This document shows, piece by piece, positions 41,263-63,470 of a stretch of DNA of 64,000 bases; positions within the stretch are counted from its first letter, which is position 1; every line of letters begins with the position of its first letter. The stretch is from Iphione sp. A-MEVVRFRX5 (Eukaryota), in the NCBI GenBank assembly GCA_976226885.1, contig OZ320321.1:40734001-40798000 (forward strand). Direction: 5' to 3'. Under the pieces are notes generated by a model. That model worked only from the letters and a program-made list of their open reading frames with translations. It did no database searches and was not told the DNA's origin. Made by a program: the position numbers and the translations under genes.

Positions 41263-41268
41263 TTTATT
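41263..41268 (-). terminator. RPL34 polyadenylation signal
   Basis: AATAAA 18 nt after the RPL34 stop codon. Confidence 0.75.
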
Positions 41269-41285: not shown

Positions 41286-44200
41286 TCACTTGCTTTTGCC
41301 AGCCACAGCACGCAACACTTTGACGACGATCTTCTGTTCCTCAATGAGGAAGGCGCGGATAATCCTGAAATCAAGAGATACATAACCACGTTACAAACAA
41401 AGCAAGAAGGCAAACCTGTACACTCACTTTAACCCTTTCCTGGCCGACCAATGCTATATCATCCACATATGGATGATGGTTTTCTTGTCTTTCTACAAAT
41501 GTGATTTTTAAATAAGTCTGTGCTTCATTCATTGAAATGTGGTCACCTAGTCTCCTGCTTCTTATTTCTACTGACATATTCATGAAATTATTGTTTCCAT
41601 GGAAACAGGTCACATGACCAGTCGGGATTTCAATCAGTTTCTTTTTCATGCCAATTTACCTAGAGAAAGCATACATTATAACCCATTAACTGTGTCCTAT
41701 AAAATATAAGTCTCCATTAGTTTGTCAGAATGTCTGAATCTGTAATTAAGAATATATAATTTCCTTTCCTAGTAAAAATTTTTGAAAGGTTTCCATCATT
41801 TATACTTAAAGAAAAACATATAGTTAGTATGGAACTCCAAGTCATCCTGATAACAACTTATGGCTTATGGTTTCTGTTAGAATCTGCATATTATGATAAT
41901 TTGTGTGATGAATATGAAAACCATCAATACCAGAAAGGCATATTTTTATACTAAACCTTTTTATAAAATATTTATCTTACTTCATAAGGATGCAAATCAA
42001 ACTAAAATTTTGAATTATTCCTATGTTCTACTGCCATGGCAACATATCAACATTCTTTACTCTTACATCAATGATGTAAGTGATGTCAAAAATGAGCCAT
42101 TTTGACATCGAACATATGACATCACAGATATTCATAAAACATGACTTCCTTCACACATATAAACAATGAATACATGAAAATGTAGCAAAACACTTCCTGA
42201 ACATTTTTGTAATTAGGTATTTTTCTCTAAAGTAAATATTTATTGTTCTTTTATTGGAAATTATGTAAATTTATGCAAATTTTTACAAATTTTACTCGAT
42301 AACACCCAATATTCAACTGTGCGGTGTTACTATAGTAACCAATGAAATGAAATGGTACTATCACAGAAGAAGCTCCATTTCAAATTGTTTAGTTTCCTAT
42401 ATAGAATGATATAGCAAACATCACCACAAGGCTAGTAGTACTAAATCATAACTTATATGACAGCTGTATCTACAGAAAACCCTATTTATGGCGGCCAGGA
42501 AAGAGTTAAACAAACCCTTAAATTCAATCGTCCAAGAGCATAATGTTCGTGACTTACTATTAACGGTCCTAATAGGGACACCAAAGAAAGCATTGAGCCG
42601 TACCTGTCACGGACACACTTGTGACACCGAGAGCCTCCGTATGTCCTGGAAACTGTCTTCAGGCGTTTCGTCATGTTCTTACGCTCAATAGGCCTTGAAG
42701 GAGTGATCTGTCAATTATAGATGTAGCGAGTCAAAATGCGAACTTAAGAATGGGTCACAGTTTAAGTCACTCTCCATTCCAACTAACATTGGCCGGGCTA
42801 GCCCTTTCACTGTCCAACTACACTTTAGAATATTCACACTCGATGTATCCTTCTATTCTATAACGTACGGGCTTAGTTACACGTAAATATCTTTAGAAAT
42901 TCATGCAACACGTTTGTCTGATATATTCTAGCACGGGATGGGTTTAAGTATGAGTGCTTGCACAATCACCTGTATGTCGACTTTTAATACCGGATCGTAA
43001 TTTTGCTCAAATAAGCCATAACACAAATAAAGTGACCAGAAACGTTGTTAAGTCCGCATTTTTGGCATCTAGCAAACTTCATTGTAACAGGCCACGAAAT
43101 ACACTAATTCACACAACTTTTCATGAAATCTAACTATACCCATTTGTCGGTGTCATGCCTTTATAAAGGTTTAATATCTACTGCACTGCATACGATTAAT
43201 ACTTTTGGAGCAATTTTTCAAGGGGCAAATGCTACTGCTTCGATTTTCCCTTCCTTAGTTTAAGAAGATGACTGGAAGAGTCTTTTTCCGCCTGCCAGAT
43301 AACAGACCGCAAATCAATGAGCCATGTACACTGCAGCGCGGACAGTCCTTTACATCTATGACTAAACTGAACCTTGAGTTATGGTGCAATCTGATGGAAC
43401 CTATCAGGATTTGCATTTTCTCAAACATCAGTTTCCACATGGTCCTACTTTTGTGACTCGTAATACTACAAAGGGGACCTAAATCAATAAAAAACTCATT
43501 CAACATACTCCTCACTCAATACACAGTCCTCATGTGTACATATAACTCATGTGATATACTAAAAAAGCAAATGAACGACAAATCTTCCGGACATAAGGAG
43601 AAGATACTCTGCAGTTACATCAACAATGTCTGTACAAATACGAAGTGCATGTACAGTAAAATTAAATGCACCTGTCTTTTGACAGTACCGATGTATTTGT
43701 TTTGGAATGAACGTATATGATTATATCTATATCAAGATAGAGTCGTCTACGTTGCATTCCTTGTGACCATTGCCTCCGGTCTTGTTAGAAGTGTGTTCTT
43801 AAATGAAAATTTAATAAATATATAGTGTTTGTCCTTCTTTGCCAATATGCTTTCTACCACTTTGGAATATCACATCACAATGTCTACTAATTGGAACAAA
43901 TACTGGGAGGGTGGTTTGTTGATGTCGAAGAAGGAACATCAATTTAACAAGAAGATACATGCAGCGGACACTGCATAGGGAGGTCGCATTCTCTAAAGAG
44001 AAAAACTGTGATAACTCTAAAACTATTGCAGTTAGAAGGACATGACTTCAACCAAAATACTGTGGGATGAATTACAGAGGTGATAAGGGTAGGTAGAGTG
44101 ATGTAGAGAAACAGGTAGAGAAAAACACTGATAACTTGAAAACTATTGAACATACAAGGATGGGACCTGAACCAAAATACTGTGGGCCGAATAATAAAAG

Positions 44201-47200
44201 TGACAGGGACAGGTTAGAGTAACACAGTTGAGGGGCAGGTGAAGAGAAAAACTGTGATAACTCAGAAACTATTGCATATACAAGGACGGGACGAACCAAA
44301 ATACTCTAGGCCAAATGATGGAGGTGATACGGGCAGGTTAGGGTAATGGAGTGGAAGGGCAAGTAAAGAGAAAAACTGTTATGGAGATGGAGCAGGTAAA
44401 GGAAAAGAATTATGCCCAATTTCATATGTGAGACAAAAAACTATGATAATGTAATGTGATAAGGTTACCTGTGGCACCACAGCCACTCGTATTGTACTTG
44501 GCGAACTCTAAGACTTAGTAGTAACGTTGCCTGCGGCACCACAGTTGTGTAGATTGTAGTAGTAATGTTGCCTGTGGCACCACAGCCACTCGTGTTGTAC
44601 TCTAAGACGTAATAGTAATACTGCCTGTGGTTCCACAGTCATTTATGTTGTACTTGATGAACTCTAGGGCTTAGGAGTAACGTTGCCTGTGGTTCCACAG
44701 CCACTTGTGTTGCACTTGATGAACTCTAAGACTTAGTAGTGACGTTGCCTGCGGCACCACAGTTGTATAGATTGTAATAGTAACGTTGCCTGTGGCACCG
44801 CAGCCACTTGTGTTGTACTTGATGAACTCTAAGACTTAGTAGTGACGTTGCCTGCGGCACCACAGTTGTATAGAGTGTAATAGTAACGTTGCCTGTGGCA
44901 CCACAGCCACTTGTGTTGTACTTGATGAACTCTAGGACTCAGTAGTAACGTTGCCTGTGGCACCACAGTCACTTGTGTTGTACTTGGTGAACTCTAAGAC
45001 TTTAGTGCATGTGTACTGGAGAGTAAGCTTAGGGCCGCCTGTGGCACCACAGTCATTTATGCTAAATGGCCTGTGGTACCACAGGCATATAGGATGTTTA
45101 AGGTCACCTTGGACCCTGGATGACAAGGCACCTGCAATATGATTGGTAGACAAAAAAAAGTCTTTGGAATGTTGTAGCCTTTTTATTCCATGACTGATAC
45201 ATTGTATTGATCACATGGCCAGGAGTTTGACTATAAATATGGGCCCTGTGTGGCCAATAAAACAGTTTGCACTTGGACCTCACTAGTGGACCTTGTTGAT
45301 TTGGGGATGTAACAAACCCACTTGGATTACCTAGGGTTGGCACTTGGATGTAACCGCACTGGGACTACAGTGAAGTAACTGAGACAGGATAGCACTAGAC
45401 ATAGCTGGATCTACCAAGTGGGAGATTTAACAGAGAATTATCCTGGAGTTAGGACTCGGATAAAATATCACTGGAATTATAGTGGAGTAACTAAGCGAGT
45501 TGGACTTAGTTGGATTACACCAAGTGAGGAAGTCAGCCATTAAATTACAATAACTTGAGAACTATTCTTGCAATAAAGATAGGACCAAAATACTTTCTTA
45601 TACTTTCTTCTGCTCTCCAGTGCTTCTCACACTACTTTCACGCAGAACACCAAATTCTACACTTCTAGGAAGACCCTGGCCACTATCCAGTGCTTCTCAC
45701 AATAAATTCGTGCAGAACGCCAACTTTTACATTTCTATGCATGTCCTGGTCATTTATCCAGTGCTTCTCATGCTAATTTCGCACTGAGCGCGGACTTTTA
45801 CACTTCTAGCTTCTGGGAAGGCCCTGGCTGCTCCCCATTGGTTCTCACACTAATTTCGCGTGGACCGCCAACAAGGCACCTCGGCAGCCAAGGCAGGGTG
45901 ACTGGTGCTCCGACCTGTTTCCCTCCTGCTCTGAGCCCCCTCCAGCAACGGTACTTGAACCAAAATACTCCTAGCCCCCACACGGCTGTCACCCGGCCTC
46001 TTACAGTCTCTGCCACAGTGGAGGCACCCCGGTGGCCGCTTGCTGGACTGACTGATGCACCCACCTTCCCTCCCACTCTGGGCCATGATCAAGGCACACC
46101 GGCAGGCACCTGCTGACTGATCTCGGGTAGAGAGTGGTTGAGGGAGGAAGGACCACGACCAAGGGACCCCAGCAGGTGCCTGCTGACCAATCTTAGGTGG
46201 AGAGTGGTGGCAGAGGACTGCTTCCCTCCTACTCTTGCCTACTCCCCCTTGGGCAATCCCAGTCAGGGCAGGCTGACAAAGGATGGGGAGTAGTTGGAGG
46301 TACAGCACCCACCTGAGCGGTGTCCCACCCTTCCTCTAGCTCTGGAGGAGCTGTCTATCAATTCAGACCCTGACTAAGGTGACATAACACCCACTCAACT
46401 TCAAAGAAAACCAAACCAGAGTTTTACCATTGGTTTTCCAATAGACAGAAAAGACAAGCAAATGTGATGTAACAGCACTGATGCCTATTCAGACAAAGGC
46501 TAAGCCCCTCCCACCCTCCACCGAGTTGGCATATGCATATAATGGAAGTCATGACTATCTGCTGACTGAGAAGCACTTATAGACAAAGATATGCCCTCCA
46601 CTGAATATACATGTACTTGAAAACCTGGAAATGGAAATTCATGGTTGTGAACTGTGCTTGATTCATTTCTGGGACCCAGGTAATGATCTTAAGTTACAAA
46701 GTACTTACTCCATGCAGTTTGACTTTGCAGTCGCCGCATTTTGGGATGGTTCCAAGTTTCTTTGTGTAGTGGTACACCAATTTACCGCCTGCAATACAGT
46801 AAGAATTATTCATTTTTGAAACTGGGCAAATATATACAATCATACGTACTCTGTGTTACAGATATTACATCATAGGACTTTACCACTGACCAGGTAGACG
46901 GAATTTTTTTTAAATTTAGGAATAGTGCCCAAATACAAAGTTAGCTTGCAACTTGAGTTTAGAATTAATATGGTATATGTATATCAATAATTACGTAAAG
47001 CCATAGAATTTTAGTCTATTTTACCATATTTGTTGTTTGCTGTTTGGGTAATTCCAGTGAACATTTTCCAGATATGATTTAGGACACGCTTTACCAATAT
47101 AAACCATTATCTGTTAATCTGCATGTTTTCAGTGAAGGGTACCAAAATATCATGACATACATTAATAATGTATTCTCAGTAATATATTCTTAACTCAAAA

Positions 47201-48624
47201 ACGATTCCATTACTACAATAGAAAAAAATAATTAATACTGTGTTACCGGCTTACCTGGAGTCTTTGTGCTGTATGATAGACAGTCATCAGATTAACATGA
47301 AAATAAAAAGAAGCAATCATTGTTTAGTATTTACTGACTAAGTTCAAACAAAATGCACTAGGAATATTGTAATGGTTAGGTATAGGGACAGCCTAGAGGT
47401 ACTGGACTAAAAACACTTTGTGTGCAATGCCGGTCTATGTAAAATCAGTTTTGACAAGTGTGCACTGATTCTAAGCACCTGTATGTCACATCACAGTGGT
47501 AACCAATCAATCCCTCTACATCCTTAGTTGGCATATTCATTTACAATACATGTACACTATTTAACTGTATACTATATATACAAGAACCTACGAGGTCTAT
47601 TGTCCCCTGCCTGTTGTTCAACCAAGTGGAACTAATTGTTACTGCTTGGGTGAGCAGACTATTTTTTTACACACATGTACATACTTTTTCCCTTGTTTTT
47701 ATTTAAAATGTTCTAAATTATTATCAAAGTAAGCTGGTAGGAAGCGTCCAAATGGGTAGGCATCATAGCAAATAAATCGGCTTATCAGACACAACACGTT
47801 TGCAGTTAAAATAAACACAAGACTGACAGATGCTCAGACTGTAGCATTCCTAGGTCCTTCCCTCTCTTAGGCAGAGGACAATAATTTATAGTTTTGATAG
47901 AGGTGTACACCTTTGGCATTAAATAAATACCATTCTACAAAAATTCACAAGCAAATGTTAAGAGATGCAACTGTCCCCAAAGAAAGTTGCCTGGGTTTTA
48001 TAATGATAAATTATGCTTCAGTTTATGGAGCACGTTTCTACCAGCGCACGCATCAGTTTTCGATGAGCTGAGAAACGGGGGGGGGGGAGATCAACAATGA
48101 TGTACTAGATTCTAGTACAATCTCACTACTTACTCCTTAACGAAAAACAGATTAAGGAATCATTTTCTTATTTCTTTCCTTTTCTCATATTTTCTAGTGA
48201 TTGATGGAGGAAAGTTACAGTTAGGTGCAGCAGTGAGGATGAACTATTTTCGACGATAACAAGCACTATCAGTAATACTAAACCTACATGCAGTTTTCGT
48301 ACATTTATGAAAGGTGTTCATGAGGACTGGATTGTCGATCTGGTAGCGCAGGCAACAAAACGTATGTATTCCGATTCACATCACATCATTTGTTTTGAAT
48401 CAGATCAGGTGTATGAGCGATAATAAGTTTGAATCGAACTTCGTAGGTTTACCATGCATGGATCTTCCATATAAAATGATATAATACAACGATTAATATT
48501 ACTTCTGAAGCTACACATTTCCCTGTTATGTATCAAGCAACAAAAAATGTACTTACATCCTTTTGCGGTTCGACTTGGTGTTGTATGACAGGCGACGCCT
48601 GTATGTTAACCTCTGGCTAGGCAT
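41286..48624 (-). CDS. RPL34: 60S ribosomal protein L34 (eL34), complete, 114 aa
   Basis: complement(join(41286..41364,42604..42707,46709..46788,47255..47268,48557..48624)) gives [114 protein letters not shown]. All introns are GT-AG with consistent phases, and the CxxC…CxxC zinc motif is present. Confidence 0.97.
41433..42505. mobile_element. piggyBac-type MITE (TTAA TSD) filling most of the last RPL34 intron
   Basis: TTAA|CCCTTTCCTGGCCG … CGGCCAGGAAAGAG|TTAA, 13/14 TIR match. Confidence 0.9.
43997..44385 (+). repeat. ~120-126-bp diverged tandem repeat, 3+ copies
   Basis: AGAGAAAAAC(T)GTGATAAC…AACCAAAATACT units start at 43997, 44117, 44243 and 44367. Confidence 0.85.
44469..45084. repeat. 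Minisatellite built on the palindromic core CTG(T/C)GG-N2-CC(A/G)CAG, 12 copies
   Basis: Cores at 44469, 44531, 44572, 44625, 44687, 44749, 44790, 44852, 44893, 44955, 45039 and 45071; spacings are mostly 62 or 41 bp. Confidence 0.9.
45617..45865 (+). repeat. ~70-bp diverged tandem repeat, 3-4 copies
   Basis: CCAGTGCTTCTCA at 45617, 45687 and 45758, with a degenerate copy ~45835. Confidence 0.75.
47255..47268 (-). CDS. RPL34: 14-nt RPL34 coding microexon (CACAAAGACTCCAG)
   Basis: CATACAG|CACAAAGACTCCAG|GTAAGC; it supplies the conserved (I)TKTP(G) and is needed to keep frame (phase 2 to phase 1). Confidence 0.93.
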
Positions 48625-48829
48625 GGCGAACCTGTCACGTTAATAAAAGGCATTTAGACACTTAACATGTAAATATGAGGTACAACACCAAAGAGTATCA
48701 TCTTAATTATTTATCGGCAGAAAATGGGCTGTCTGCTTCTTATCTTTTCACATGATGGCCTAGGATTTAATTTTCATATGTATCACGTAGCCATTACCTT
48801 CAGTATACAGGATTGGAAAGGAGGCTTAC

Positions 48830-48852
48830 CGGAAGAGGAAACAGATTGCTGC
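48830..48852. promoter_or_regulatory. Shared RPL34/VTI1A start region: TCT/5'TOP initiator on - and back-to-back splice donors
   Basis: Minus strand reads TTCCTCTTCCG|GTAAGC (TCT motif, donor at 48829, acceptor CAG before 48631). Plus strand reads …TTGCTGC|GTAAGT (donor 48853) with acceptor TTTTTTGTTTCAG at 49017. CCGGAAG ETS site overlaps. Confidence 0.7.
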
Positions 48853-49072
48853 GTAAGTGTCAGTGCGTTGTGTATTCAGTATAGATGTTTTGAACCACAT
48901 GTAAAAGTGCTGTTCTGAGAATTGTATGAGAATTTCAGACACTAGAGTATTAATATAAATATTCCAATATATTTGTATTTTTTTGTTTACTTTCATTGGT
49001 GTTCTTTTTTGTTTCAGAAGATATGCTTATCTCATATTACCTACATTGAGTAGTTACCAAACAACTGTCAAG

Positions 49073-52000
49073 ATGGCCACGCTCATGGACTCGTATGAGC
49101 AACAATATTCTACTTTAACTGCTGAAATAACTACGAAGACTGGGAAAATCCCTAATCTTACAGGAAGTGAGTGAATGCACAATTTTTTATCATCATTCCG
49201 TTCAAGCATCCTATTCTATCAATGCAAAGCTGGTTTTTGTTCACATTTTCCTAGTCCAGCTGCTGAGATTGTTTTGATTGTCCGATGTGACATGTTGACG
49301 TCGAATGACTATGTGTCAATCGATCATCTGACTGCAAAAAAAAAAATGAAGCCTATTTCATGGTACGCAGAGCAGTCTTTTCATCTGTAAATTTAGTTTA
49401 ATATACTATGAGGAACATGACATGGGATAAACACATTTAAGGGGGGATCGGAACAGATAAATTTCATCAATTCGATAATTATGTACCAGTGTACCAGGCT
49501 CCAATGCATGCATACATGTACCGCTCAACTCTCATAACAAAACCTCTAAGAAAAGCTCCTTTCTAATGAAGTTGACCTCCGCCAATGACAGACATCTGTC
49601 TTATAAAAAAAAATAGGCATGAAATATAGTCATCTGTCAAAATCCACTGAACATAGGCTTAGTTTGTCATTGTTGATAATATGGTAATGACAAAACCCTT
49701 CGCTAGATACTTGTGATACGGTACCGGGTACACGTTTTTTCGGCGTTATCCACATTTCATCGGTAGAAGTTAACATGTAAGTGAAATAATGATGTGATAC
49801 TACTTACATATATTGACATGACGAAGTGGCACAGTAAGACAAATCTACCCCACTACGAGAGGTAAAGCTAAACTGATACATTTAGTACAGCACAATAAAA
49901 TGTACAAGGCACAATAAGACAATAAATACTTCACCTTGGCTCTGGACTGATAACATTTTTCATTAGCTGCAATAAATACTACAGGGGATGCCAAATATAA
50001 GCAAAGCTTTCTGCCAAAGGTCAGTGTTACCTTCGGGAGGGGGTGGAACTTTATTATGTCATTCAGCATCATCAGTGTTACAAATAGCTGGTGTTTTTTT
50101 TTTGGAGCTGGAATTGACCAATCGCACGTATCTTAGCAATGATAAGAAAAACGGCTAATACAGCGCCACACCTTTTACTGTTTGCAGGGATAGATCATTG
50201 TCTACTTAAGGTCACATGATCAAAACATATTCATTTTGATGCTAAGTACAGAATATTTCCATGATATACATGATAAGTCAATTGACCGATCACACATAAC
50301 TTAAAAACATTTGGTTTCCAGTATCATAATGGTGTGTTTAACTACTTCCTCTGACAGCTGAATCATTTGTACCTACAAATGGTTGAAAGTACGTCATCTC
50401 TACCTATCTATTCATTTGTTGTCATGTTTTATGCAGTTGTCATGTTGATATGCAGGATGCTTATAGTTGAATGCCACTGTACAACCAACCAACAACTCCA
50501 TTCTTTGCCAAAGTGGGTTCATTACTGGTATTGGTCACATTGTGATAACTGGCGAATTTGATGAGTAAACATCCTAAAAGTGGTGAATTCAATGAAAAAA
50601 TGCTCTAAAAGTGGCACATTGGATGAGTAAACATCCTTGAAGTGGCAAAGTGGATGAGTAGACATCCGAAGAGCAGTGAATTTATCTCCCTAAAAATTTA
50701 AGGAGTAAATATCCTATAAGAAGCAAAGTTGACGAGTTTTACTTAATCTAACATAGGTATACACATGTTCTTGCCCTGTGGTAACAGGGTTATTGTCATC
50801 ATGTGAAGTGGATATCTACATGGTCGAAGGAGATCTATAAGATGTGAGGTAACAGGGCGGTTGCAACAGTTTTATGGTACAGTACTGAAATAATGTGGAT
50901 ATTACCCTAAGACATGTGGTCGCACACCGGAATGGTTGCATTACAGTCTGGTCACATTGTGGTATTATGACACATAGGTTAACATAAGCCAAAATTTCAG
51001 TTCCGAGGTTATTTGGCGATACTAAAAGTTTGCTCACTTTATGATATGGTCACGTAGCATCAATCAAATGTACTGGATAACAAGTGTTTTGGGGATTGTG
51101 CTATATAATAACATAGTGAATTTATATAGGAAGGTAGGTTGTATGAAAACCTTTGAAAAATCAATCTAAGCGTCAGATTATTACACTAGGAGGGATGAAC
51201 CCATCAACATAAGAATTGCAGAAGATCCTGTTAAGGGCTTCTACTAACAACAATTATAGAGATATGCCAAATTTAATACAGTGGATATCTAATACGTCAA
51301 ATGTATGAGAGAATGCAGTGGTCCACTGCAACAACACTGAACTTTGAAACATATGCGACCACACTACCACCTGCTTTGTGTTGTGCAGATGGTCACGACA
51401 ATGCATCTGCCCACTTCATGGTAACGAAATTCTATGGATATGAACCTAAAATGTGTTGTCGCAGGGTAATATGGTTGTATTATGGTCTCGCACCATTTTG
51501 GTATTGTGATATACGGGTTAATATAAGGGAAAATTGGGCTCTGAGCTTATTTAGCAAGTATAAGGGCTTTTGTTACTTTACAGTCTGGTTACATAGTGGC
51601 ATTTAATAGTATCTTCCCTGCTTTAACACAGACATCTCTCCTTGATGCACATACAATTGGCAGACCACCGTATTTCAATTTTTTTTCATAGTAATACTCT
51701 TTCTCCCAAGTTGTTCAGTGAGAAATCGAAGCTGTAACTTTGATCTGAATATTGTATTTGTGATCAAGCGCTCTGCATTTTCATCACAAGGTTTCTATTC
51801 ACACAAGTTTTACTGGCAAAATTGATGTACATGTGGTCATTTTAGGTGAGAAACAACAAGCTATCAGTAATGTCGAGCGGCTTATTGAAGAGACGCGAGA
51901 ACTGGTGAGTAGTATATTGGAATATTTTAAAATTCATTTAGTTGTGATGTGCTGACTTGAAAATGTTGTGTAGAATTTTCATCAAGAAAAGTGAATTTCA

Positions 52001-55000
52001 ACTTTAAAGAAGGTGGGTTTTTAGCAATAGGGATTTATTTGTATATGGAAAGTAAGACACATTTGAGCAGATGGATTCGACTGTGAAAGTGTCATTCAAG
52101 AGGGGGCTTTGTAAACATCTTGAATAGGATGAGGGAAATGTTTTAGGCAAACCGGTCCAAGATCTAAGTAAGCTCTGTACCGGTTGTCATATAAATATTT
52201 TAAGAAAGGCGGAGACTGATCATCGACGTTTGCTTTAACCACTCAACGCGTAGTCACGCTTAAATTGACTTGTGGGATGACCTGTCTGTTATCACAACCA
52301 ACAGTGATGGCTGCTTGATTGTGCCATCAAAAATCCAGGTAGATTTCTCCCTGACTTTTGGCCTCTCAGGGAAGGCTTAAGTTGAACCGCCAAACTTCTG
52401 CATGGCACTGAACATCGCGATCAATCACCCAAACGGAGTTTATCTGTTACCAGACCGATGGAAGTTTGCAAAGTTGATGCCTTGACATTAGATAGTAACT
52501 GTCAACTGGATGCTCTTTTCAAAATGATTGCATGTTGCTATTTTTACGTCGTGTACTAAGTCGTAAGGTGCTTTACATGAGAGAAATTGCTATTTAAATT
52601 GGAGACTTAATGAATTTTCTGCTGTTGGGTTTACCAATCATGGGGGAGGGGAACGACATGTCAACTAGGGCCAAAGAACCAGGTCCCTATGTTTTTGATG
52701 TTTTGCAGGGAAAATGTTCTGAAACAGATTTTGGTTTATGTGTTGTAAATTTAACACCATAATAAGTAGAATCTTTATATAAATAAAGACCGCAACATAC
52801 ATTCAAAGAATTTGGCTGTATTGTGTTCTTCTTAAAAATTGATTACAAGCTTTCAACCCTCCTGGGTCTTCGTCACTGACATGCCCCAACCCAGGTTCCA
52901 GTAGGATTTCTCTACCATTGTCTGGACACACAATAGCTGCTGAGGTGAGAACCCATGGTAGCGGGCAGCATCCCTCAACCTTGAATAGGCCCCACGAAGG
53001 TTACAGGCTAGTCAAGACCTTTGGCCCAGCCTACACCACAGTAATACACATAGCCACTTTAGGCTGGATTCCCTTGTTCTGAGGAGGGTGAAGGGGGAGG
53101 GGTGTCCAACAGGGTTGAATGGGGGGGGGGGTTCCAGCAGGGAAGAGGGGAAGGGGGAGGCACAGTCACATACTCTTCTGGTCCTGCCAAGTCCTCAGTA
53201 GGTAGTTGCTCATCTAGCCTGCTCAGTGCTGTGATTTATCCCCCTCGTCTCACCGTCCGGAGGCCTGGAGTCATGGGGGAAGGGCGCTTCACCGATTAGG
53301 CAGTGCCAGGTTGCCCTATAAGGGTGACCCTTTTGTATGCTTTCCCTGCTCTTAATGGGTGCTGGCAGGCTTCTGTCCTGGATGAAATGTCTTTTAATGT
53401 GTGCCTGTCAGGGGGCACTGGCGGGCTTCTGTCCTGGTTGTGATGATGAGCTGGGAGCGTTAGTGCCACAGTGTGCTGCCAGTTCTGGGTGGTATTTTTG
53501 GTGCCAAGCATTGATGTTGTATTGGTGGGAGGATCTCAAACAAGTGGCCCTGATGAGGGTCCCACCCCATCTGTGTGTGAGGGGGGGGATCATGAGGAGC
53601 ATACAGCTGTTGCTTCGGGGAATCAGTTTCAGTGTTGTGCCAACTTTTGTGCTGTATCTTGGTTGTTGTTACCTTGCCTATTAGTCTCAGGCTTATAGGT
53701 TTGATGCAGGCTCTGACTCGTACAGTCAGACCTTGTTAACTGAACATGCCCTGTTTCACATTTTTATGTACGGATAACAAATTTTTCATTTAATGAGGCA
53801 GAAAAGCATTGAAAATGATATGTTGGCTCCTGAAATTTACTTCGGTTAATGCAGCATTTCGGATAACAAGGGTTCGGATAGCAAGGTTTGACTGTATTTA
53901 TAGTCCTTGAGTGAAGCAGTACTGCAGTAAATAGTTTCGAGTCTCTGATTGGTAGATCATGGGTATTTTGAAATGACAAATTAAAAGATTAAATATAATT
54001 ACTAGAAATAGTTAAATGACTAATCAATATGAATCAGAGTTGTAATGTCCAGATAAAGCCTGAGGAAGCCCTCGAAGGAGGATGAAACGTTGCTGCTCCT
54101 GTACATGTTTCAAATCAACAAAGTACCAAAACACCTTGTACTTCTGTTGGTTGGATGTCCTTTGTTCTTTGATTTTGTCCAGATTTAAGTATTTGAGTGA
54201 AAAACAGTCCTTTTATAACTGGAAAATATGAAGTCTGAAATATCCATCAAGGATCCAGTCTTTAGTAAGGGTCTGTCTCTTGTGTCAAGAGAAGTGTTCA
54301 TATGTATAGGCAAAATGGCAACGTAAAAGTCAAATAAGTCATACCCCTCTATTAACTAAACCTCTAAGAACGAAGCTCCTTTATAACAAAACTGGTATTC
54401 TGTACAGAATCTGAGGCACAAGACCACTTTCATAATATATATTTAAAAAGAATTAAATGAAAAGGAACGTACATATACAGACCTGTTCTTTTGCAAAGCC
54501 AAATGTTTTTTTAAAATAAATATCCAAGTCAAAGGACTTCTTTTATTGTTGCTTGGTGTGCCTGTGATGATAAAGTTCCTCACAAGATATGATTAAAAAT
54601 ATGTCATTTGTTACCCAGCTAATGATACATTAAAAGTGTTGTTAGGATAAGTCAGCTGATTTACTTTGATGAGATAAACCTTACTGGATCTAGACCTCTA
54701 AGCAACTGTTTTTGTCTCACTGTATGGCAGTTTAAACGGCATTGCCTTTCAATTATGAAAAGAAGGTGGTTAATATTTTCTAGAAACAACCATGTGGGGT
54801 TCAAAGTTGTATCATTTTATGTTTGAGAAGCACTTATTTTTTCAGTTTCGTTTCATCGCTAAGTGTTATTTGTTTTGATACGTATTATTATGTTGCCCAC
54901 ATACTTTCAGCTGGAGCAGATGGATCTGGAGGCCAGGGACTTTCCAGTGAAGGAGCGACAAAAATATAGCACCCGACTGGCCAGCTATAAAACAGAATTC

Positions 55001-55021
55001 ACGAAATTAGAACGTGATCTG
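49073..55021 (+). CDS. VTI1A: Vesicle transport through interaction with t-SNAREs 1A, first three coding exons (partial; continues beyond the window)
   Basis: join(49073..49166,51846..51904,54911..55021) gives MATLMDSYEQQYSTLTAEITTKTGKIPNLTGSEKQQAISNVERLIEETRELLEQMDLEARDFPVKERQKYSTRLASYKTEFTKLERDL, the Habc domain with close similarity to vertebrate VTI1A (LTAEIT, ELLEQMDLE, SYKxE..KLE). Confidence 0.95.
52849..54088. mobile_element. Repeat remnant flanked by two decayed hammerhead-ribozyme-like cores (possible PLE pseudo-LTR derivative)
   Basis: Plus strand 54060-54088: CTGAGGAAG-c-CCTC-gaag-GAGG-at-GAAAC. Minus strand 52877-52849: aGTGACGAAG-ACCC-agga-GGGT-t-GAAAGC. The intervening sequence is GC-rich with no recognisable domain. 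Confidence 0.35.
53723..53894. mobile_element. Tc1/mariner-type MITE with TA TSD
   Basis: TA|CAGTCAGACCTTG … CAAGGTTTGACTG|TA. Confidence 0.85.
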
Positions 55022-55877
55022 GCAAGTAATATTTTTGTTGTCTTTATTGTGTAGCATTCTGCATGACCTCCATTACGGTAGAGAACCTAATGGCTGACAT
55101 TGCGAGTTAATTTGCCACCGGAAAAAATTTAAATAACGAATTAATGGCTTACTCTTACTGTCTAGCACTTGCAGCTAGTCCTGCTGAGGACAAATTGCTG
55201 TTTGGCCCCAGGCTGTCCGAACAAGACGTGATGTTGGCTGTTTCTTGGTGGACCTGTAAATCCCAAAATCCTCCCTCTGGTGGGAAGTTTGGGAGGGGGG
55301 CTCTGCTGTATATAACCAGTTATCCCAGCATAACATCCGTACGTTTACCATATATTTGTTGATATATATATAGACAAGTCGCAGGGTTTGGATCTCACGT
55401 TCAGTTTAATCTACCTTCTACATAGATATAATATAAAAATGCATATAAACATATACACTTGCACATATAAACTCCTTCAAACACACATAAAGGAAACCAC
55501 TTTGGTTAGGCAGAGTTGTCTGGTGTGAGTATCACAGGATATATAAAGGACCTATCGATTCACACTAGGTGGTGAATGCAAAGATGACCTAGTTATAAGG
55601 ACCCTCAACATTAGTGTGGCAGTCTGCATCGAGACCTACCTAAAACACCCCAACTGCTGTATTTTTTTTCAATTCTGCACAGAAATCTCATGATTTTAGC
55701 AAATGATCTTTGATAATCTAGCTATACATATGCCAAACCTTTTTCTCCTTCCTTTTAAAGTTGATTAAAAGTGACATGAGAAAGCTCACCCGCTATCTTC
55801 AAGTCTGTCAGCTAAGTCATGTGGATGGTGTTTGTTGAGGTAGGCCCATCAGTGTACATGCCTGATCCAGCACTTCC

Positions 55878-57799
55878 TTTTTTTTTTTTTTTTTTTTGAA
55901 CGGGTGCCAGCCCAGTTTATTTCTGATTTGCAATATACACAAGTATGAATCCTGGCGCTTTTAAATTTTAACAAACAAAAAAAACTAAGAAATCTAAGAA
56001 ACAGGTGGCCTTAGCCTATGGAATCCAGCACATAATCCCATACTTTAGATTTACATTTACCATTAAGTTTGAACTTCCAAGCCATTTTTTCAGTGGTTAA
56101 TATGGAACGAAATTCTTTTAACCAAGAGTATAAATCAAAGTGACCTTCTGCATAGCAGCGTTGTCTATAAATGTAGTAACGAGTCCAAAGAAGTAAATAA
56201 GTTGTAAGGGGTTTTTAAATCCTCTTTGTATACCAAAAAGAAATTTGCGGATCGTTAAATCTTCTAGAGATTCATTAGTAATGCACTTCCACCATTTAAT
56301 AATTGTTGACCAAACATTTTGAGACCATGGGCAATCTAATAAACAATGAAAAATATCGTCTTCAGCGTTACAAAAGTTACATCTTGGAGAATCTATTATT
56401 TTCTTCTTGAACAACCAAGCATTACATGGAAGAGTGTTATGAATAATTTTGTACTGGAAAGATTGCCATCTCGTATTCATTGTACAACTAAAAGCGACTA
56501 AGTAGATTTTGGACCACAAAAAATCATCATAATTAATATTTGACATATAGTTTGACCAATAAACTTGGCCTGCTGGAACTGAGTATTGATTCTTAATTAA
56601 AAATTTATAAACTGTCTTAACAGTAGAGCTAAGAACTTTCAAAGACAATTCCTTACCAAATATACATAAGGCAGGTTCAGCAAAGTGAACAGCAGGGTCC
56701 TTACGAATAGTTTGAACATATTGCCAGGCAGGAAGGCATTGTAAAATATTATACTCTTGTGAGGAAAGAGAACACTTATATCTGTCTTCCAATATTACTT
56801 TGGCAATTAGTTGACCCTGTTCATAAAGATGACCAAGAACTGTAATGCCCACCTCCATGCATTTACGAGATAAAGCAGAACATCTAAGGCGATTATTATA
56901 CTTGTTAAACCAAAGTGGTTCACTTAAAACATCAGAAGTCGTAATCGCTTGAGGCAAATGGTACTTCTTCCAACAGGCACAGACCTCTTGGCCAAATGGC
57001 CATGTAATTCTAGCATAAGAATGAGACAATTTACTTTGGAAAAAGGCAAAAACATCTGAGGTAAATAGTAACGCTTGTACTAAGGCGTAATACACACATT
57101 TAAGATGGTCACACCAGAAGGTGACTTTCATAATACGATTGGCAGAATATCTGCCATATAAGAAAAGGAGTCAGACAAGGATGTCCAATCTCACCTTTAT
57201 TATTCATTTTGGTCGTTGAAGTATTATCCTTGTCCATTCAGCAATCTACCGTTATGAAGGGCATTAAAATCAATAATCAATATTACAAGTTAATTCAATA
57301 CACAGATGATGTGACATTACTACCTACGTCAAATGAGGAAATTGTGGAAATTTGGAATATTTTGGATACTTTTGCCTTGATTTCGGGACTGAAGGTTAAT
57401 CCGGGTAAATCACAAGCGCTACTGATCCAACAACCCAGATTTCCTAGGTTACAAAGTTTAGCTATTCAACAAGTGTCTGAAATGAAAGTACTTGGTGTAT
57501 GGTTCTTGCATAAATATGACTCTACCAAACATTATGCACTTAACTATGCTCCCAAGTTGACAAAGGTTAGGAATATTTGCAATCGTTGGAAACACCGTAA
57601 GCTTACCCTCAAAGGGTATATTACTATTGCCAACTCCCTCCTCCTATCACAATTACAATACATTATGTCTGTTACGGTAGTTCCACCACAAGTTTTTAAA
57701 GAGTTCAATTCTATAATATCTACCTTTATATGGAATGACTCACAACCTAAAGTTAGAAAAGACGTGCTCATCCAAGATACGTCGGTAGGAGGGTTAAAA
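55878..57799 (-). mobile_element. L1/Tx1-clade non-LTR retrotransposon, 5'-truncated with a 5' inversion, poly(A) tail and 11-12-bp TSD
   Basis: Minus segment 57157-55878: zf-RVT region WQSFQYKIIH…CNFCNAEDDIFHCLLDC, AATAAA 55921-55916, A20. Plus segment 57158-57799: RKGVRQGCPISPLLF…YTDD…GLKVNPGKS…GGLK. TSD CCAGCACTTCC at 55867-55877 and 57800-57810. Confidence 0.93.
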
Positions 57800-60700
57800 C
57801 CAGCACTTCCTCAGACGCTCATGCGACTTCAGTCAAGTATGCCATCTGGCGGGTCTTACGACAACTGCAACGCCCTCTTGTGGAAACTGCTAAAAATTAA
57901 AGCGCTGTAGTGAGAGCCATCCTATCCAAGAATGCGCCACCTATACCGAATTGAAAAAAAACTGCACGCGTGATAAAATTTTCTAGTCTTAAGTTGTTTT
58001 TTGCCGACGTAATTTACTCTGCGTAGATGCATTTGAAATTATCGATAATCTAGTCTCATCAGAAATATGAACATCTCAGCAGTACAGTTAGACCTCCTTA
58101 CTTGGAATATCTATAGTTGCAAGAATTCTGTCTAAAGGACTGAATAATCTTAAGTAAAGCCACAGTCGCTTCACATGTTAGAAATCCGGACGCCTTCTTA
58201 TCAAAAAATCTCACATAAGGGAAAGCCGAGAGAAGGAAAGTCTGTGTCAGACATTTCACTTTATGGACAGTTTGTTGGTCAATTCCTTTGCTATCCATGG
58301 TAGGGAGATTCTATTGTAATTATGAATTCAAGGTTATGAGCACTTGACGTATGGAGGTTGGACTGTAAATGTCATAACAGATTATGTTGTGACATACCAG
58401 AGATATAAAAAAAATCGCGAGTATCGCTTCTTTTAGAGTGCTCAGCTGGTGTAAGGGACATCCTTTTTGCTGAATGACACGTTCCATCAATAACTAGAGA
58501 AATAGAATCTGTATTTCTTTTATTTTACTGTCAGTAAAGAGCAGTGTAGTGTTATAGAGGTTCACAAGACGAACACTGTACGAAGTTCATATCCCCCTTC
58601 TAAGTTTCTACCTAGGGTCGGTACAGGAGTCCTATTATATAAAAGGTGTGCAATAAAATAGAATATGTTGTGGCCAGACTATATTTATCATAATTATAAT
58701 CGGCGCATTTTAAGTACAAAGTTTTTTTTCTGAGTAAAGTATAGAATATATAGTATGTACTTGGCTAGTCGAAGCCTGAAGATGATGTGTATGTATATGG
58801 TCGTTCAATGGCGCTTTAATATTGGATCATCTGTTTTTACATGTACAAGACTTTTATTACAAACCTGCAAATCCTGGCAAAGGTAAAATAACTTCTCTAA
58901 TGATTATTGAATGGCTTTTCCATTGAATCACTATAATATCCAAAAAGGAAAAATGACCCCGACTGGGAGACGATTACATCTCAAAGACATAATACACAAG
59001 AGAATAGAAGAAATGTCCCTATGTTAAACATGTCTAAAAGTCAATCGTATTAGGTTGACATCATGACTACATCTTAAACAGTGATGCCTGATGACGTACA
59101 GTTCGAAACCATGCAATGAGAGTCAATATATTTGATATCATGCTGGAAACATGCCAAGTATCAAGGGAGATAACTGTGTGTCAGGGACAAACAACATTTT
59201 GTCTGTTATCAAAAATCGTCGTGGTATGCTTCTTTCTCCTCCTCCCCCTGTCTGTATCTGTCTATCATTCTCTCTCGCTTTCCCGTCGTACACGAACACA
59301 CATGCATGTTAACGCATACGTGCGCGTGTAGGTACATGTATAAGTATTTACTCATTTTGAAAGGATTTTTTCTTTCTCGGGCAGCGCTTTAGAAAAGGGC
59401 TTTGACTCTGCTTTAGTACCTTCATCGTATCCCAGGTCCCACTTTAAGGACCAAATAAGGCCAGATCTTCACCATTGCCTTATCATAGAACCTCAGACAC
59501 TCACTGTCAGTCAAGTGCATGGCCGTCATCTCGTAGTACGATACAACCGTATTTGTAGCACCATGTGCGCAGCGCCATGTGTTTCCTTGCATGACAAACA
59601 GGTGCCCTAATGGACACTTTAAGCTAAATACACGTGTAGTCTTACCTCACAGATGCGTATTCTACAATCTTAGATTTTTCTGTATTTTTAGGACCACCGG
59701 CTGTTTCCAATGTCATTATTATATATTAGAAGTTACTGTCATTCTATAAAGGCTCACGTTTAACATTAGAAACTTATAACCAGATAACTTCTGTTTTTTA
59801 GGCTGGTTTCCTCGCCTATAATATAATATAATTGCGGTTTTCAATGGTCTGACAACTGTCCCGGTCGCACGTGATTAACTGCCTCGATAATAGAGACCAT
59901 TCTAACCTTCATAACGCGAGGTTTCAATACCATAACAGTTGTTGATATTCGCTTGATCACTTTGTGTGGTTTACCCATGTGTATTGGTATCTATTATCAG
60001 TCATTCAGCTTATAATTGAGGTATTATAGTCAAAGATAAGTAGTAGATTTTAGTCTGTGTTGGGGATGCAGTTAAAAATGCAGTTAAGTAGATAAGGTAT
60101 GAAAAGAATATTGATGCCTACCATGTCAAAAGGGAACTATTACCAGTAGGTAATGGCACCGGTTTTACGGAAGGTTCGACAACGGTACACGGGGTATTCT
60201 TAAGTTAAGATGAGCGTTCTAATGCACGGAGGAAGACAAAATGTTATGTATTATATGGCAGTTATAAAAGGGAATTTTACTCCATCGTTGCGTTTTTTTT
60301 ACACTGGAAGACATTATTTTGCTAATGACTTCTTATCTTTTACTCGTTCATGCAAAGTGTTCATTCTCCCAGCACCCACACAGTTCGTAGTTTGCCTGTG
60401 CGATATGTCCGTTTTGTTGCTCCTTTCCTTAACCATTCATATAACCAAACCATCCTCAATAGATCGTGTTCATGCGAGTGAAATCTGGATGGTTGGGGGG
60501 GGCTGCTCATGTTCTTTCCGTCAGGTACGGTAAGTAAGCTCGGCTAGTTTTAAGTATGGGGCGCCTGGGCTCCGTGCGTCGTCGGCTGCGTTCATTGCAC
60601 CACCTCCCTGGCCACGGGGCCCCCCTCTGCCGTCCGACGCCCTGGGCGACCCGTCGTCCCCTGAAATCATCGGCCTCTCGCAATGAGCATTAAAGCCATG

Positions 60701-60942
60701 CTCTTCCGCCTCTAACTACCGTCTGTTATAACTCCCCCTCAGTCTGGTGAGGTGACACGAGCCGGGCAGTAACTCCTCGATGGGAAAGTCTCTGCGACTT
60801 GCTACACAGCGTGCTGCGGGGATTAGAGTTAAGTCGTCCAGTTGACAGCCCGAGGGAATGCGGCTGGGAGGGGGGGGGGGGACACACGGCATAATGACAT
60901 GTGGGTTATCAATAAGGGAAAAAGTTTTCAAAAGATTTTTGT

Positions 60943-61156
60943 NNNNNNNNNNNNNNNNNNNNNNNNNNNNNNNNNNNNNNNNNNNNNNNNNNNNNNNNNN
61001 NNNNNNNNNNNNNNNNNNNNNNNNNNNNNNNNNNNNNNNNNNNNNNNNNNNNNNNNNNNNNNNNNNNNNNNNNNNNNNNNNNNNNNNNNNNNNNNNNNNN
61101 NNNNNNNNNNNNNNNNNNNNNNNNNNNNNNNNNNNNNNNNNNNNNNNNNNNNNNNN
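60943..61156. other. Assembly gap (N run)
   Basis: 214 consecutive N. Confidence 1.
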
Positions 61157-62534: not shown

Positions 62535-63470
62535 TTATGTGCGCGTGTGTGTGTGTGTCTGTATGTGTGTCTGTGTGTGTGTGTGGTGGGGGGGATGGAT
62601 AGGATGGCACGTGGGATTTTTTTTTCATCAGTGGCAGCTTCATTTGCGTTGCGTCGCTCTCGTCCTGTGTTCTCCGTTGAGAATTTTTGAATGCACAGGT
62701 CGAGGTTCATTGTCGAGGTCAGCGAGAGCGGCTTCTGATGACCTGTGGAACCCTCTCGGCATTGCAGCAGTCCCCGACTTTCCCACCGTCTCAAACGCGG
62801 GCAGGCGACGGCAGACCTTGGTGTTTGGGTGGTGGGAGGTGGGGAGGGGTGTTAGAGAGAAGAAGGGCACGGAATGGGGGGGCTGGCTAGTTGGGGAGGC
62901 ATTAAGGAGGAAGAAGAGAAGAGATCAATGCGGTAACACGCGGGCCATGCGCGGGGTGCGGGATAGAGTTCAGAGGTGCGGAAGGAGAGGTGGGGTGGGT
63001 GGGAGGATATTGGGGGGGGGGGATGAGGCTGGGGAGGGCGGTCCGCCTTAATGGAGGTCTATGGATTGGGGCCCGACTCCCGGGGAAAGAGATGAGGGGG
63101 CTGGATCGACCCTTCTCTCCAGAGCCCCCCCCCCCCCAGTATGCACTTTACCCCCACCCCCCATGGAACCCAGCGACGAAAGACCCTCATGAAGGATCCA
63201 CTTAAGGTTACGGGGTGGAATGAGCACCTTAGCCGGATAGCAGCCACCTCGGCCCCCACGCCCTCATATGCCATGCGGGGCAGACACGAGTAGGGCAGTC
63301 AGACCTTGTGCGCGTCGGCCCCAGTACGTGTGGAGGTTACGTGAAGGTCAAGGGTATGACCTGCAAGGCTTTGACCTTCAGCTTAGTTGCCCAGCGGAAA
63401 TATAGTGGCGTCGTGTGTGTGCGTGTGTCTGTATGTGTGTCTGTATGTCTCTCTTTATAGTGTGTGTCCA
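62535..63470. repeat. Two (TG)-rich microsatellite-like tracts (~62535-62585, ~63413-63470) flanking a G/C-skewed low-complexity stretch
   Basis: Both tracts contain GTGTGTCTGTATGTGTGTCTGT; G-runs and C-runs lie between them. Confidence 0.7.

What the first reader, a model, noticed from the sequence alone, without database searches (positions are those of the whole stretch)
41286..55021. RPL34 head-to-head with VTI1A: predicted pre-duplication state of the vertebrate LEF1 and TCF7L2 loci
Seen: RPL34 (-) and VTI1A (+) diverge from one start region. Known, recalled and not looked up: in human, VTI1A lies just upstream of TCF7L2 on the same strand, while RPL34 lies upstream of and divergent from the paralogue LEF1, with the lncRNA RPL34-DT transcribed from the RPL34 promoter toward LEF1. 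Inference: the ancestral block was RPL34<->VTI1A->TCF and was reciprocally pruned after whole-genome duplication. RPL34-DT could then be the remnant of a lost VTI1A ohnologue, and a TCF/pangolin gene should lie to the right of this window on +.
Basis: partly seen in the sequence, partly recalled or inferred. Interest (0 to 1): 0.72.

Follow-up and report, generated by a model that had tools for sequence, protein, structure and literature searches.

The report
Ancient RPL34–Vti1a head-to-head gene pair
An invertebrate genome keeps ribosomal protein gene RPL34 and the SNARE gene Vti1a back to back on one short start region; the same pair occurs in six other invertebrate lineages, once with the Wnt factor TCF just downstream, so it very likely shows how the vertebrate LEF1 and TCF7L2 neighbourhoods looked before genome duplication.

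Summary
RPL34 (minus strand, 114 aa, five coding exons, 41286-48624) and the first three coding exons of Vti1a (plus strand, from 49073) diverge from a 448-bp spacer. Vti1a runs off the right end of the window.

The pair is not a local accident. RPL34(-)/Vti1a(+) is head-to-head in all seven non-vertebrate bilaterians examined:
- the window species
- Ridgeia (annelid)
- Liolophura (mollusc)
- Lingula (brachiopod)
- Lineus (nemertean)
- Strongylocentrotus (sea urchin)
- Branchiostoma (amphioxus)

It is absent in two cnidarians and in the fish Polypterus.

In Lingula a TCF gene lies 5.8 kb downstream of Vti1a on the same strand.

Papers state that human VTI1A and TCF7L2 lie in this order on one strand. 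They also state that a mouse Rpl34 copy is adjacent to Lef1, and that LEF1 and TCF7L2 are 2R ohnologues. Reciprocal loss after duplication is therefore well supported.

Three points are not shown:
- a TCF gene to the right of this window
- the exact human RPL34/LEF1 orientation, which is recalled only
- RPL34-DT as a Vti1a relic

This is a clean new instance of a known kind of event: ancient microsynteny followed by loss after genome duplication. I found it in none of the texts I could search.

The parts
41263..41268 (-). AATAAA polyadenylation signal about 20 nt after the RPL34 stop codon
   Evidence: Read directly from the sequence.
41286..41364 (-). RPL34 last coding exon (..IIRAFLIEEQKIVVKVLRAVAGKSK, stop)
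   Evidence: Splice model. Aligns at DNA level with the RPL34 exons of five other species.
42604..42707 (-). RPL34 coding exon 4 (ITPSRPIERKNMTKRLKTVSRTYGGSRCHKCVRDR)
   Evidence: Pfam PF01199, 31.8 bits. AG/GT borders.
46709..46788 (-). RPL34 coding exon 3 (GKLVYHYTKKLGTIPKCGDCKVKLHG)
   Evidence: Pfam PF01199, 37.7 bits. Borders.
47255..47268 (-). RPL34 14-nt coding micro-exon; it restores the frame and supplies ..ITKTPG..
   Evidence: Found by motif scan with AG and GTAAGC flanks. Needed for an open frame. The same peptide is contiguous in the transcript-derived P0172.
48557..48631 (-). RPL34 exon carrying the ATG (48624) and MPSQRLTYRRRLSYNTKSNRKR, with 7 nt of 5' UTR after a probable acceptor
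   Evidence: DNA match to the Lingula, Liolophura and Branchiostoma exons.
48798..48824 (-). Inferred non-coding first exon of RPL34. It begins with the oligopyrimidine tract CCTCCTTTCC (TOP-like) and ends at a GT donor.
   Evidence: The same tract, a 26-28-nt exon and a donor lie 170-200 nt before the RPL34 ATG in five species. There are no RNA data, so this is inferred.
48625..49072 (.). Shared 448-bp start region between the two ATGs; a putative bidirectional promoter
   Evidence: ATG-to-ATG gaps in other species (gene coordinates; shown to be ATG-based): 209 bp in Lineus, 234 in Lingula, 449 in Ridgeia, 464 in Branchiostoma.
48829..48835 (+). CCGGAAG (ETS-type core) directly 5' of the inferred RPL34 start site and between the two inferred start sites
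   Evidence: TCTTCCGG occupies the same place in Ridgeia and CTTCCGC in Lineus. A motif match only.
48854..49017 (+). Possible 5'-UTR intron of Vti1a (donor GCTGCG|GTAAGT, acceptor TTTTTTGTTTCAG|)
   Evidence: Splice consensus only. Branchiostoma has a similar donor and acceptor pair. Inferred.
49073..49166 (+). Vti1a coding exon 1 (MATLMDSYEQQYSTLTAEITTKTGKIPNLTG..)
   Evidence: Pfam V-SNARE, 21.9 bits. 79 % identity to Owenia Vti1a.
51846..51904 (+). Vti1a coding exon 2 (SEKQQAISNVERLIEETREL)
   Evidence: AG/GT borders with phase fitting exons 1 and 3.
54911..55025 (+). Vti1a coding exon 3 (LEQMDLEARDFPVKERQKYSTRLASYKTEFTKLERDLA)
   Evidence: Pfam V-SNARE, 39.8 bits. phmmer hits to Vti1a proteins. 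Borders.
55026..64000 (+). Vti1a intron 3, which runs off the window. It holds retroelement pieces (56118-57131 minus, 57134-57907 plus) and an N gap at 60943-61156.
   Evidence: No Vti1a exon found. Pfam zf-RVT and RVT_1. N run.

Best explanation
The window comes from a non-vertebrate, probably lophotrochozoan, animal. It holds an intact ribosomal protein gene RPL34 and the 5' third of the endosome/TGN SNARE gene Vti1a. They are transcribed away from each other, with 448 bp between their start codons.

Shown: this divergent pair is shared by annelid, mollusc, brachiopod, nemertean, echinoderm and cephalochordate genomes. It therefore dates at least to the last common ancestor of protostomes and deuterostomes.

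Inferred mechanism: the two housekeeping genes use one bidirectional promoter. On the RPL34 side there is an ETS-type site, an oligopyrimidine (TOP) start site and a 27-nt non-coding first exon. The Vti1a start site lies a few tens of bases away on the other strand. A break between the genes would damage both, which would explain why the pair persists.

Shown in Lingula only: the single invertebrate TCF gene lies directly downstream of Vti1a on the same strand.

Inferred for vertebrates: the block RPL34<->Vti1a->TCF was multiplied by the two rounds of genome duplication and then pruned in complementary ways. The LEF1 copy kept RPL34 and lost Vti1a, leaving the gene-poor interval between RPL34 and LEF1. 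The TCF7L2 copy kept VTI1A and lost RPL34.
For: Gene models:
- Pfam hits.
- Intact spliced RPL34, 95.6 % identical to a transcript-derived eL34.
- Vti1a exons 64-79 % identical to named orthologues.

Pair conservation with the same orientation:
- Branchiostoma, ATG-to-ATG gap 464 bp
- S. purpuratus, 4.5 kb
- Lingula, 234 bp
- Lineus, 209 bp
- Liolophura, 2.7 kb
- Ridgeia, 449 bp
- The listed gene coordinates are ATG-based.

Absence elsewhere: Rhopilema, Porites and Polypterus, which has a DHHC gene as neighbour.

TCF: the Lingula gene starts 5.8 kb downstream of Vti1a on the plus strand and carries CTNNB1_binding and HMG_box. Its exon 1 reads MPHVSSSGGDDLASSDEVKVYKDEGEE.

Promoter architecture: shared by five species.

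Vertebrate halves:
- PMC3946716: VTI1A, a lncRNA and TCF7L2 lie on one strand in that order.
- PMC5570277: an Rpl34 copy is adjacent to Lef1.
- PMC9303524: the four TCF/LEF genes are treated as 2R ohnologues of one invertebrate gene.

General model:
- PMC3514665 discusses reciprocal loss of co-regulated pairs after duplication.
- PMC7530604 describes bystander loss creating gene deserts.
Against: - TCF is seen next to Vti1a in only one invertebrate.
- In Lineus a WD40 gene and an ABC transporter follow Vti1a. In Liolophura a JmjC gene follows it.
- In Branchiostoma, sea urchin and Ridgeia the 10 kb downstream are empty, so the position of TCF there is unknown.
- Whether TCF follows Vti1a in this genome could not be seen.
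- The strands of human RPL34, RPL34-DT and LEF1 are recalled, not checked.
- No RNA data exist for this species, so the start sites, the non-coding exons and co-expression are all inferred.
- No non-exonic sequence is conserved between the loci, so there is no direct sign of TCF enhancers inside Vti1a.
- Ecdysozoans were not sampled.
Confidence: 0.78

Rival explanations
1. The RPL34<->Vti1a pair is ancient, but vertebrate RPL34 came to lie beside LEF1 by a later rearrangement or by chance. It was not inherited from a triple block, and the Lingula Vti1a->TCF adjacency is a lineage-specific coincidence.
For: TCF is adjacent in only 1 of 7 invertebrate loci within the 10-kb reach. Lineus and Liolophura have other genes after Vti1a. 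The RPL34-LEF1 interval in mammals is recalled as hundreds of kb.
Against: - Vti1a->TCF on one strand, with no protein-coding gene named between them, occurs independently in Lingula and in human (PMC3946716).
- RPL34 beside one TCF/LEF paralogue and VTI1A beside another is what reciprocal loss predicts.
- By chance this is of the order of 1 in thousands of genes for each adjacency.
Confidence: 0.1
2. The pair persists by neutral inertia in slowly rearranging genomes, not because of a shared promoter. The two genes have separate promoters that merely lie close together.
For: - In sea urchin and Liolophura the ATGs are 4.5 and 2.7 kb apart, so a very short spacer is not obligatory.
- Other ancient microsynteny was noted elsewhere in this genome, which suggests a generally conservative genome.
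- There are no expression data.
Against: - The pair and its orientation are kept in 7 of 7 lineages spanning both bilaterian branches, while the genes on the outer side of RPL34 differ in every species.
- Five species share a spacer of 209-464 bp and the same TOP/mini-exon layout.
Confidence: 0.12
3. One reading: the human lncRNA RPL34-DT is the transcriptional remnant of the lost Vti1a ohnologue.
For: The RPL34 promoter was bidirectional with Vti1a on the other side in the bilaterian ancestor. A divergent transcript at that promoter therefore sits where Vti1a once started. PMC5577775 shows that some lncRNAs are relics of coding genes, and notes that bidirectional promoters can seed lncRNAs.
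Against: - Divergent transcripts arise at most strong mammalian promoters (general knowledge), so no ancestry is needed.
- Neither RPL34 nor VTI1A is named in the two relic-lncRNA papers I checked.
- Coding similarity is not expected to survive since the vertebrate duplications.
Confidence: 0.12

Closest known systems
Conserved ancient microsyntenic pairs of the co-regulated 5'-5' class (Irimia et al. 2012, PMC3514665)
   Same: The orientation is divergent, the spacer is under 1 kb, and pair and orientation are kept across phyla. Both genes are housekeeping. That paper's discussion foresees reciprocal loss of the two genes from duplicated regions.
   Different: The RPL34/VTI1A pair is not named in the main text, and the supplements were not available. 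The pair no longer exists in the vertebrates checked (absent in Polypterus; absent in human from recall), so a screen anchored on human pairs would miss it. Co-expression was not tested here.
Genomic regulatory blocks and their dismantling after vertebrate genome duplication (Touceda-Suarez et al. 2020, PMC7530604)
   Same: A developmental regulator (TCF) lies next to an unrelated, intron-rich bystander (Vti1a). After 2R one copy keeps the bystander (VTI1A-TCF7L2). Another loses its exons and is left with a gene-poor interval (RPL34 to LEF1), as in their model.
   Different: None of these genes is named in their main text. No enhancer or conserved non-coding element inside Vti1a was shown here. 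The block also has a third member (RPL34) that marks the far edge of the lost gene.
Macro-synteny study of TCF/LEF genes (Torres-Aguila et al. 2022, PMC9303524)
   Same: It asks the same question: how the four vertebrate TCF/LEF loci derive from one pre-duplication locus. It treats them as 2R ohnologues.
   Different: It works at the level of chordate linkage group Q and whole-chromosome neighbourhoods. RPL34 and VTI1A are not mentioned. The present block gives immediate flanking markers instead.
TOP-type ribosomal protein gene promoters
   Same: There is an oligopyrimidine tract at the inferred start site, a very short non-coding first exon, and an ETS-type site next to it (general knowledge of ribosomal protein genes).
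   Different: Here the layout is inferred from sequence in five species, without mapping of RNA 5' ends.

Membership tests
eL34 / RPL34 gene (functional, not a processed copy) | Ribosomal_L34e domain and a full-length open frame | tested here: met
   PF01199 on two exons. 114-aa spliced ORF. 95.6 % identity to the transcript-derived P0172.
eL34 / RPL34 gene (functional, not a processed copy) | Introns with canonical borders at positions shared with orthologues | tested here: met
   All internal borders are AG/GT. Exons align one-to-one with five species. There is one extra intron, which makes a 14-nt micro-exon.
Vti1a-type SNARE | N-terminal V-SNARE (Habc) domain, with closest relatives annotated Vti1a | tested here: met
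   PF05008 on exons 1 and 3. 64-79 % identity to Vti1a of Owenia, Lineus, Lingula and Branchiostoma.
Vti1a-type SNARE | C-terminal SNARE motif and membrane anchor | not testable with these tools
   Residues after about 89 are encoded beyond the right end of the window.
Co-regulated ancient microsyntenic pair | 5'-5' orientation with a spacer under 1 kb | tested here: met
   448 bp between the ATGs. 209-464 bp in four other species (gene coordinates; ATG-based).
Co-regulated ancient microsyntenic pair | Pair and orientation conserved across distant phyla | tested here: met
   7 of 7 non-vertebrate bilaterians (plus the window). 0 of 2 cnidarians.
Co-regulated ancient microsyntenic pair | Correlated expression from shared elements | not testable with these tools
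   No sequencing run was listed for this DNA.
Genomic regulatory block (bystander plus developmental regulator) | A developmental transcription factor adjacent to the bystander | tested here: inconclusive
   Met in Lingula, where TCF lies 5.8 kb downstream. Not visible in this window. Other genes follow Vti1a in Lineus and Liolophura.
Genomic regulatory block (bystander plus developmental regulator) | Conserved non-coding elements or enhancers of the regulator inside bystander introns | tested here: inconclusive
   blastn of 41-64 kb against all loci matched exons only. Cross-phylum non-coding conservation is rarely detectable, so this says little.
Reciprocal ohnologue loss after the vertebrate 2R duplications | A single undivided block in outgroups | tested here: met
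   Full triple in Lingula. RPL34<->Vti1a in amphioxus, an invertebrate chordate outgroup.
Reciprocal ohnologue loss after the vertebrate 2R duplications | Complementary retention in paralogous vertebrate regions | tested here: inconclusive
   Polypterus VTI1A has no RPL34 neighbour. Papers give VTI1A->TCF7L2 on one strand and Rpl34 adjacent to Lef1. The strands at the LEF1 locus rest on recall, and no vertebrate RPL34 locus could be fetched.
Reciprocal ohnologue loss after the vertebrate 2R duplications | The flanked genes (LEF1, TCF7L2) are 2R ohnologues | not tested
   Taken from PMC9303524. No tree was built here.

The most novel reading that the evidence does not exclude
The gene-poor interval between RPL34 and LEF1 in vertebrates is the emptied body of a lost Vti1a ohnologue. 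It would still carry TCF-type enhancers that were once intronic to Vti1a, detectable as duplicated conserved non-coding elements shared with the VTI1A/TCF7L2 region. RPL34-DT would be what is left of that gene's promoter activity. RPL34 and VTI1A would then serve as immediate flanking markers to settle which lamprey and hagfish TCF genes correspond to LEF1 and to TCF7L2.
Probability: 0.25. Interest if true: 0.6.

Novelty: new member of a known kind. Interest (0 to 1): 0.5.

Why it matters
TCF/LEF factors are the nuclear end of Wnt signalling. TCF7L2 is a major diabetes and cancer locus, and VTI1A-TCF7L2 fusions recur in colorectal cancer.

Knowing that RPL34<->Vti1a->TCF was one block before the vertebrate duplications does three things:
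- It explains why VTI1A sits beside TCF7L2 and RPL34 beside LEF1.
- It offers a concrete origin for the gene-poor region upstream of LEF1.
- It gives two tightly linked markers for assigning the disputed cyclostome TCF genes, which linkage-group-level synteny left unresolved (PMC9303524).

It also adds a well-documented case of a ribosomal protein gene sharing one promoter region with an unrelated gene in lineages on both main branches of bilaterians. The principle itself (conserved head-to-head pairs, regulatory blocks, reciprocal loss after duplication) is already established, so this is an instructive example rather than a new rule.

Tried and rejected
- RNA evidence: no sequencing run was listed for 46500-52000. 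Read laying was therefore not used, and the start sites remain inferred.
- The scan's earlier notes: no TCF, LEF, SNARE or Wnt note exists in this genome, and places beyond 64000 cannot be asked for.
- Papers: no relevant paper combines VTI1A, TCF7L2 and synteny or microsynteny terms, nor RPL34 and VTI1A. The supplements of the two microsynteny papers are not held.
- TCF position in amphioxus, sea urchin and Ridgeia: only 10-kb flanks can be fetched, and these are empty. TCF exon 1 of Lingula finds nothing in them or in the window. No full-length TCF protein id could be obtained. The length rule of the protein search excludes exon-sized queries, and I did not type a long sequence or read through stops.
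- Three look-ups gave no usable locus: two were non-longest isoforms and the Owenia locus was withheld.
- My first guess for the RPL34 non-coding exon (CCTCTTCCG|GTAAGC at about 48830-48845) was dropped. The neighbouring CCTCCTTTCC..AAG|GTAATG has the same layout in four other species.
- Rfam found no snoRNA or other RNA family in the window. The bacterial-type promoter scan is irrelevant for this organism.

Full report
**What is in the window.** The window looks like an animal genome rich in retroelements.

On the minus strand, Pfam Ribosomal_L34e hits two exons. A motif scan found the exon with the start codon at 48624. The frames of that exon and the next did not fit. A 14-nt micro-exon at 47255-47268, flanked by AG and GTAAGC, restores the frame.

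Spliced, the five coding exons give an intact 114-aa eL34 with AG/GT at every internal border. This protein is 95.6 % identical over its whole length to a transcript-derived eL34 (P0172). The match includes the unusual MPSQ start and the ITKTPGG stretch made by the micro-exon. So this is a working, intron-containing RPL34 and not a processed copy.

On the plus strand, Pfam V-SNARE hits exons 1 and 3 of a Vti1-type gene. The three coding exons are 49073-49166, 51846-51904 and 54911-55025. They match residues 1-88 of named Vti1a orthologues at 64-79 % identity. No later exon lies before 64000, so the gene runs off the window.

The two start codons are 448 bp apart.

**Which organism.** The closest named eL34 proteins are from annelids (Arenicola, Ridgeia), a bivalve and a phoronid. 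The closest Vti1a exons are from Owenia, Lineus, Lingula and Branchiostoma, and vertebrates are more distant. The window is therefore from a non-vertebrate, probably a marine lophotrochozoan. The phylum is not settled. No sequencing run was listed.

**Is the pair more than chance?** I fetched the genomic place of Vti1a in other animals with 10-kb flanks.

| Species (group) | Arrangement | ATG-to-ATG gap |
|---|---|---|
| Window species | RPL34(-) / Vti1a(+) | 448 bp |
| Branchiostoma, two assemblies (cephalochordate) | RPL34(-) / Vti1a(+) | 464 bp |
| Strongylocentrotus (echinoderm) | RPL34(-) / Vti1a(+) | 4.5 kb |
| Lingula (brachiopod) | RPL34(-) / Vti1a(+) | 234 bp |
| Lineus (nemertean) | RPL34(-) / Vti1a(+) | 209 bp |
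| Liolophura (mollusc) | RPL34(-) / Vti1a(+) | 2.7 kb |
| Ridgeia (annelid) | RPL34(-) / Vti1a(+) | 449 bp |
| Rhopilema (cnidarian) | no neighbour within 10 kb | n/a |
| Porites (cnidarian) | hydrolase gene head-to-head | n/a |
| Polypterus (vertebrate) | DHHC gene beside VTI1A, no RPL34 | n/a |

The listed gene coordinates are ATG-based. Counting the window, that is seven of seven non-vertebrate bilaterians, from both great branches.

The genes on the far side of RPL34 differ in every species: a SAP-domain gene, a sugar transporter, a sialyltransferase and a DHDPS-type gene. What is kept is this pair, not a larger inert block.

The pair therefore dates at least to the ancestor of protostomes and deuterostomes. 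Ecdysozoans were not sampled.

**How the pair probably works.** In the five species with short spacers, the RPL34 strand carries an oligopyrimidine tract (CCTCCTTTCC here). It lies 170-200 nt before the RPL34 ATG. A GT donor follows 26-28 nt later, and a probable acceptor lies a few bases before the ATG. This is the usual layout of a TOP-type ribosomal protein promoter with a tiny non-coding first exon (general knowledge).

The pattern occurs in 0.07-0.3 % of shuffled spacers per species. It was defined after I had seen the data, so that figure overstates the significance.

An ETS-type core (CCGGAAG, 48829-48835) sits directly upstream of the tract here. The same site occurs in Ridgeia and a near-identical one in Lineus.

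On the other strand a good donor (48853|48854) and acceptor (49017|49018) suggest a short non-coding Vti1a exon that begins within about 30 bp of the RPL34 start. Branchiostoma shows the same arrangement. In Lingula and Lineus the tract begins only about 40 nt from the Vti1a ATG.

I therefore read the spacer as one bidirectional housekeeping promoter. All of this is inferred from sequence, since no 5' ends were mapped.

**The TCF link.** In Lingula a 509-aa gene starts 5.8 kb downstream of Vti1a on the same strand. It has precomputed CTNNB1_binding and HMG_box hits. Its first exon reads MPHVSSSGGDDLASSDEVKVYKDEGEE, the typical beta-catenin-binding start of TCF/LEF proteins. Pfam scores it 22.3 bits against a cut-off of 22.4.

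Elsewhere the picture is mixed:
- Lineus has a WD40 gene and an ABC transporter after Vti1a.
- Liolophura has a JmjC gene 8.8 kb downstream.
- In Branchiostoma, sea urchin and Ridgeia the 10 kb downstream hold no called gene and no TCF exon 1.

I could not reach further. The look-ups are limited to 10-kb flanks, and I could not obtain a full-length TCF protein id within the rules.

**The vertebrate side.**
- PMC5570277 states that one mouse Rpl34 copy is adjacent to Lef1.
- PMC9303524 treats TCF7, LEF1, TCF7L1 and TCF7L2 as 2R ohnologues of a single invertebrate gene. It analyses synteny only at linkage-group level and never mentions RPL34 or VTI1A.
Human LEF1 is on the minus strand and RPL34 on the plus strand, several hundred kb away, with no protein-coding gene between them. 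RPL34-DT starts at the RPL34 promoter and points towards LEF1. This was not checked with a tool.

A protostome has the triple. Amphioxus has the RPL34<->Vti1a half. Vertebrates have the two complementary halves beside two ohnologues. The simplest history is therefore one ancestral block pruned reciprocally after duplication.

This matches two published general models. PMC3514665 discusses reciprocal loss of co-regulated pairs after duplication. PMC7530604 describes loss of a bystander's exons leaving a gene desert next to the regulator.

**What remains open.**
- Whether TCF lies to the right of this window. I put it at roughly even odds, given one yes, two no and three unknown among the sampled invertebrates.
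- Whether Vti1a introns hold TCF enhancers. Only exons align between the loci, which is uninformative at this evolutionary distance.
- Whether RPL34-DT is anything more than ordinary divergent promoter transcription. I consider the relic reading unlikely to be demonstrable and did not test it. The two relic-lncRNA papers I checked do not name these genes.

**Novelty and score.** No main text I could search reports this block. The supplementary pair lists of the microsynteny surveys could not be read, so it may already sit in such a table.

It is a new, well-supported member of a known kind of phenomenon. It is useful for TCF/LEF ohnologue assignment and for the origin of the region upstream of LEF1. 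A specialist would not find it surprising in principle. Interest 0.5.

Noticed in passing
window 47255-47268 (minus): RPL34 has a 14-nt coding micro-exon. In Lineus and Branchiostoma the same residues (about 24-56) lie in one exon, so this lineage has an extra intron. A transcript-derived eL34 from a close relative (P0172) has the same peptide, which supports the splicing.
   Followed up: partly
window 48798-48835; L009 about 9190-9230; L006 about 9950-9975; L004 about 9930-9960; L002 about 9705-9735: A conserved promoter layout in five species: an ETS-type site, a TOP-like tract, a 26-28-nt non-coding exon and a donor, always 170-200 nt before the RPL34 ATG.
   Followed up: partly
window 56118-57131 (minus) and 57134-57907 (plus): Two abutting pieces of non-LTR retroelements in opposite orientation (zf-RVT and RVT_1) lie inside Vti1a intron 3. 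Further reverse-transcriptase pieces lie at 22155-22793 and 31441-31782.
   Followed up: partly
window 43994-44379 and 44599-45001: Satellite-like tandem arrays (124-bp unit; 62/103-bp unit, up to 94 % matches) lie inside RPL34 intron 3. A G+C-rich stretch follows at about 45.8-46.3 kb.
   Followed up: no
window 60943-61156: A run of 214 N (assembly gap or masked) inside Vti1a intron 3. It was left as it is.
   Followed up: no
P0001 (Centruroides Vti1a model): The predicted protein repeats the exon-3 peptide three times. This is either an annotation or assembly artefact, or tandem copies of that exon.
   Followed up: no
Polypterus VTI1A locus; Porites L008:1-9700: Where RPL34 is absent, another gene sits head-to-head with Vti1a: a DHHC gene in Polypterus and an alpha/beta hydrolase gene 300 bp away in Porites. 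The Vti1a promoter seems to be paired with a divergent partner in most animals.
   Followed up: no
Owenia fusiformis Vti1a locus: The locus of the closest named Vti1a relative was returned as withheld, without DNA or a gene list, so the nearest comparison could not be made.
   Followed up: no
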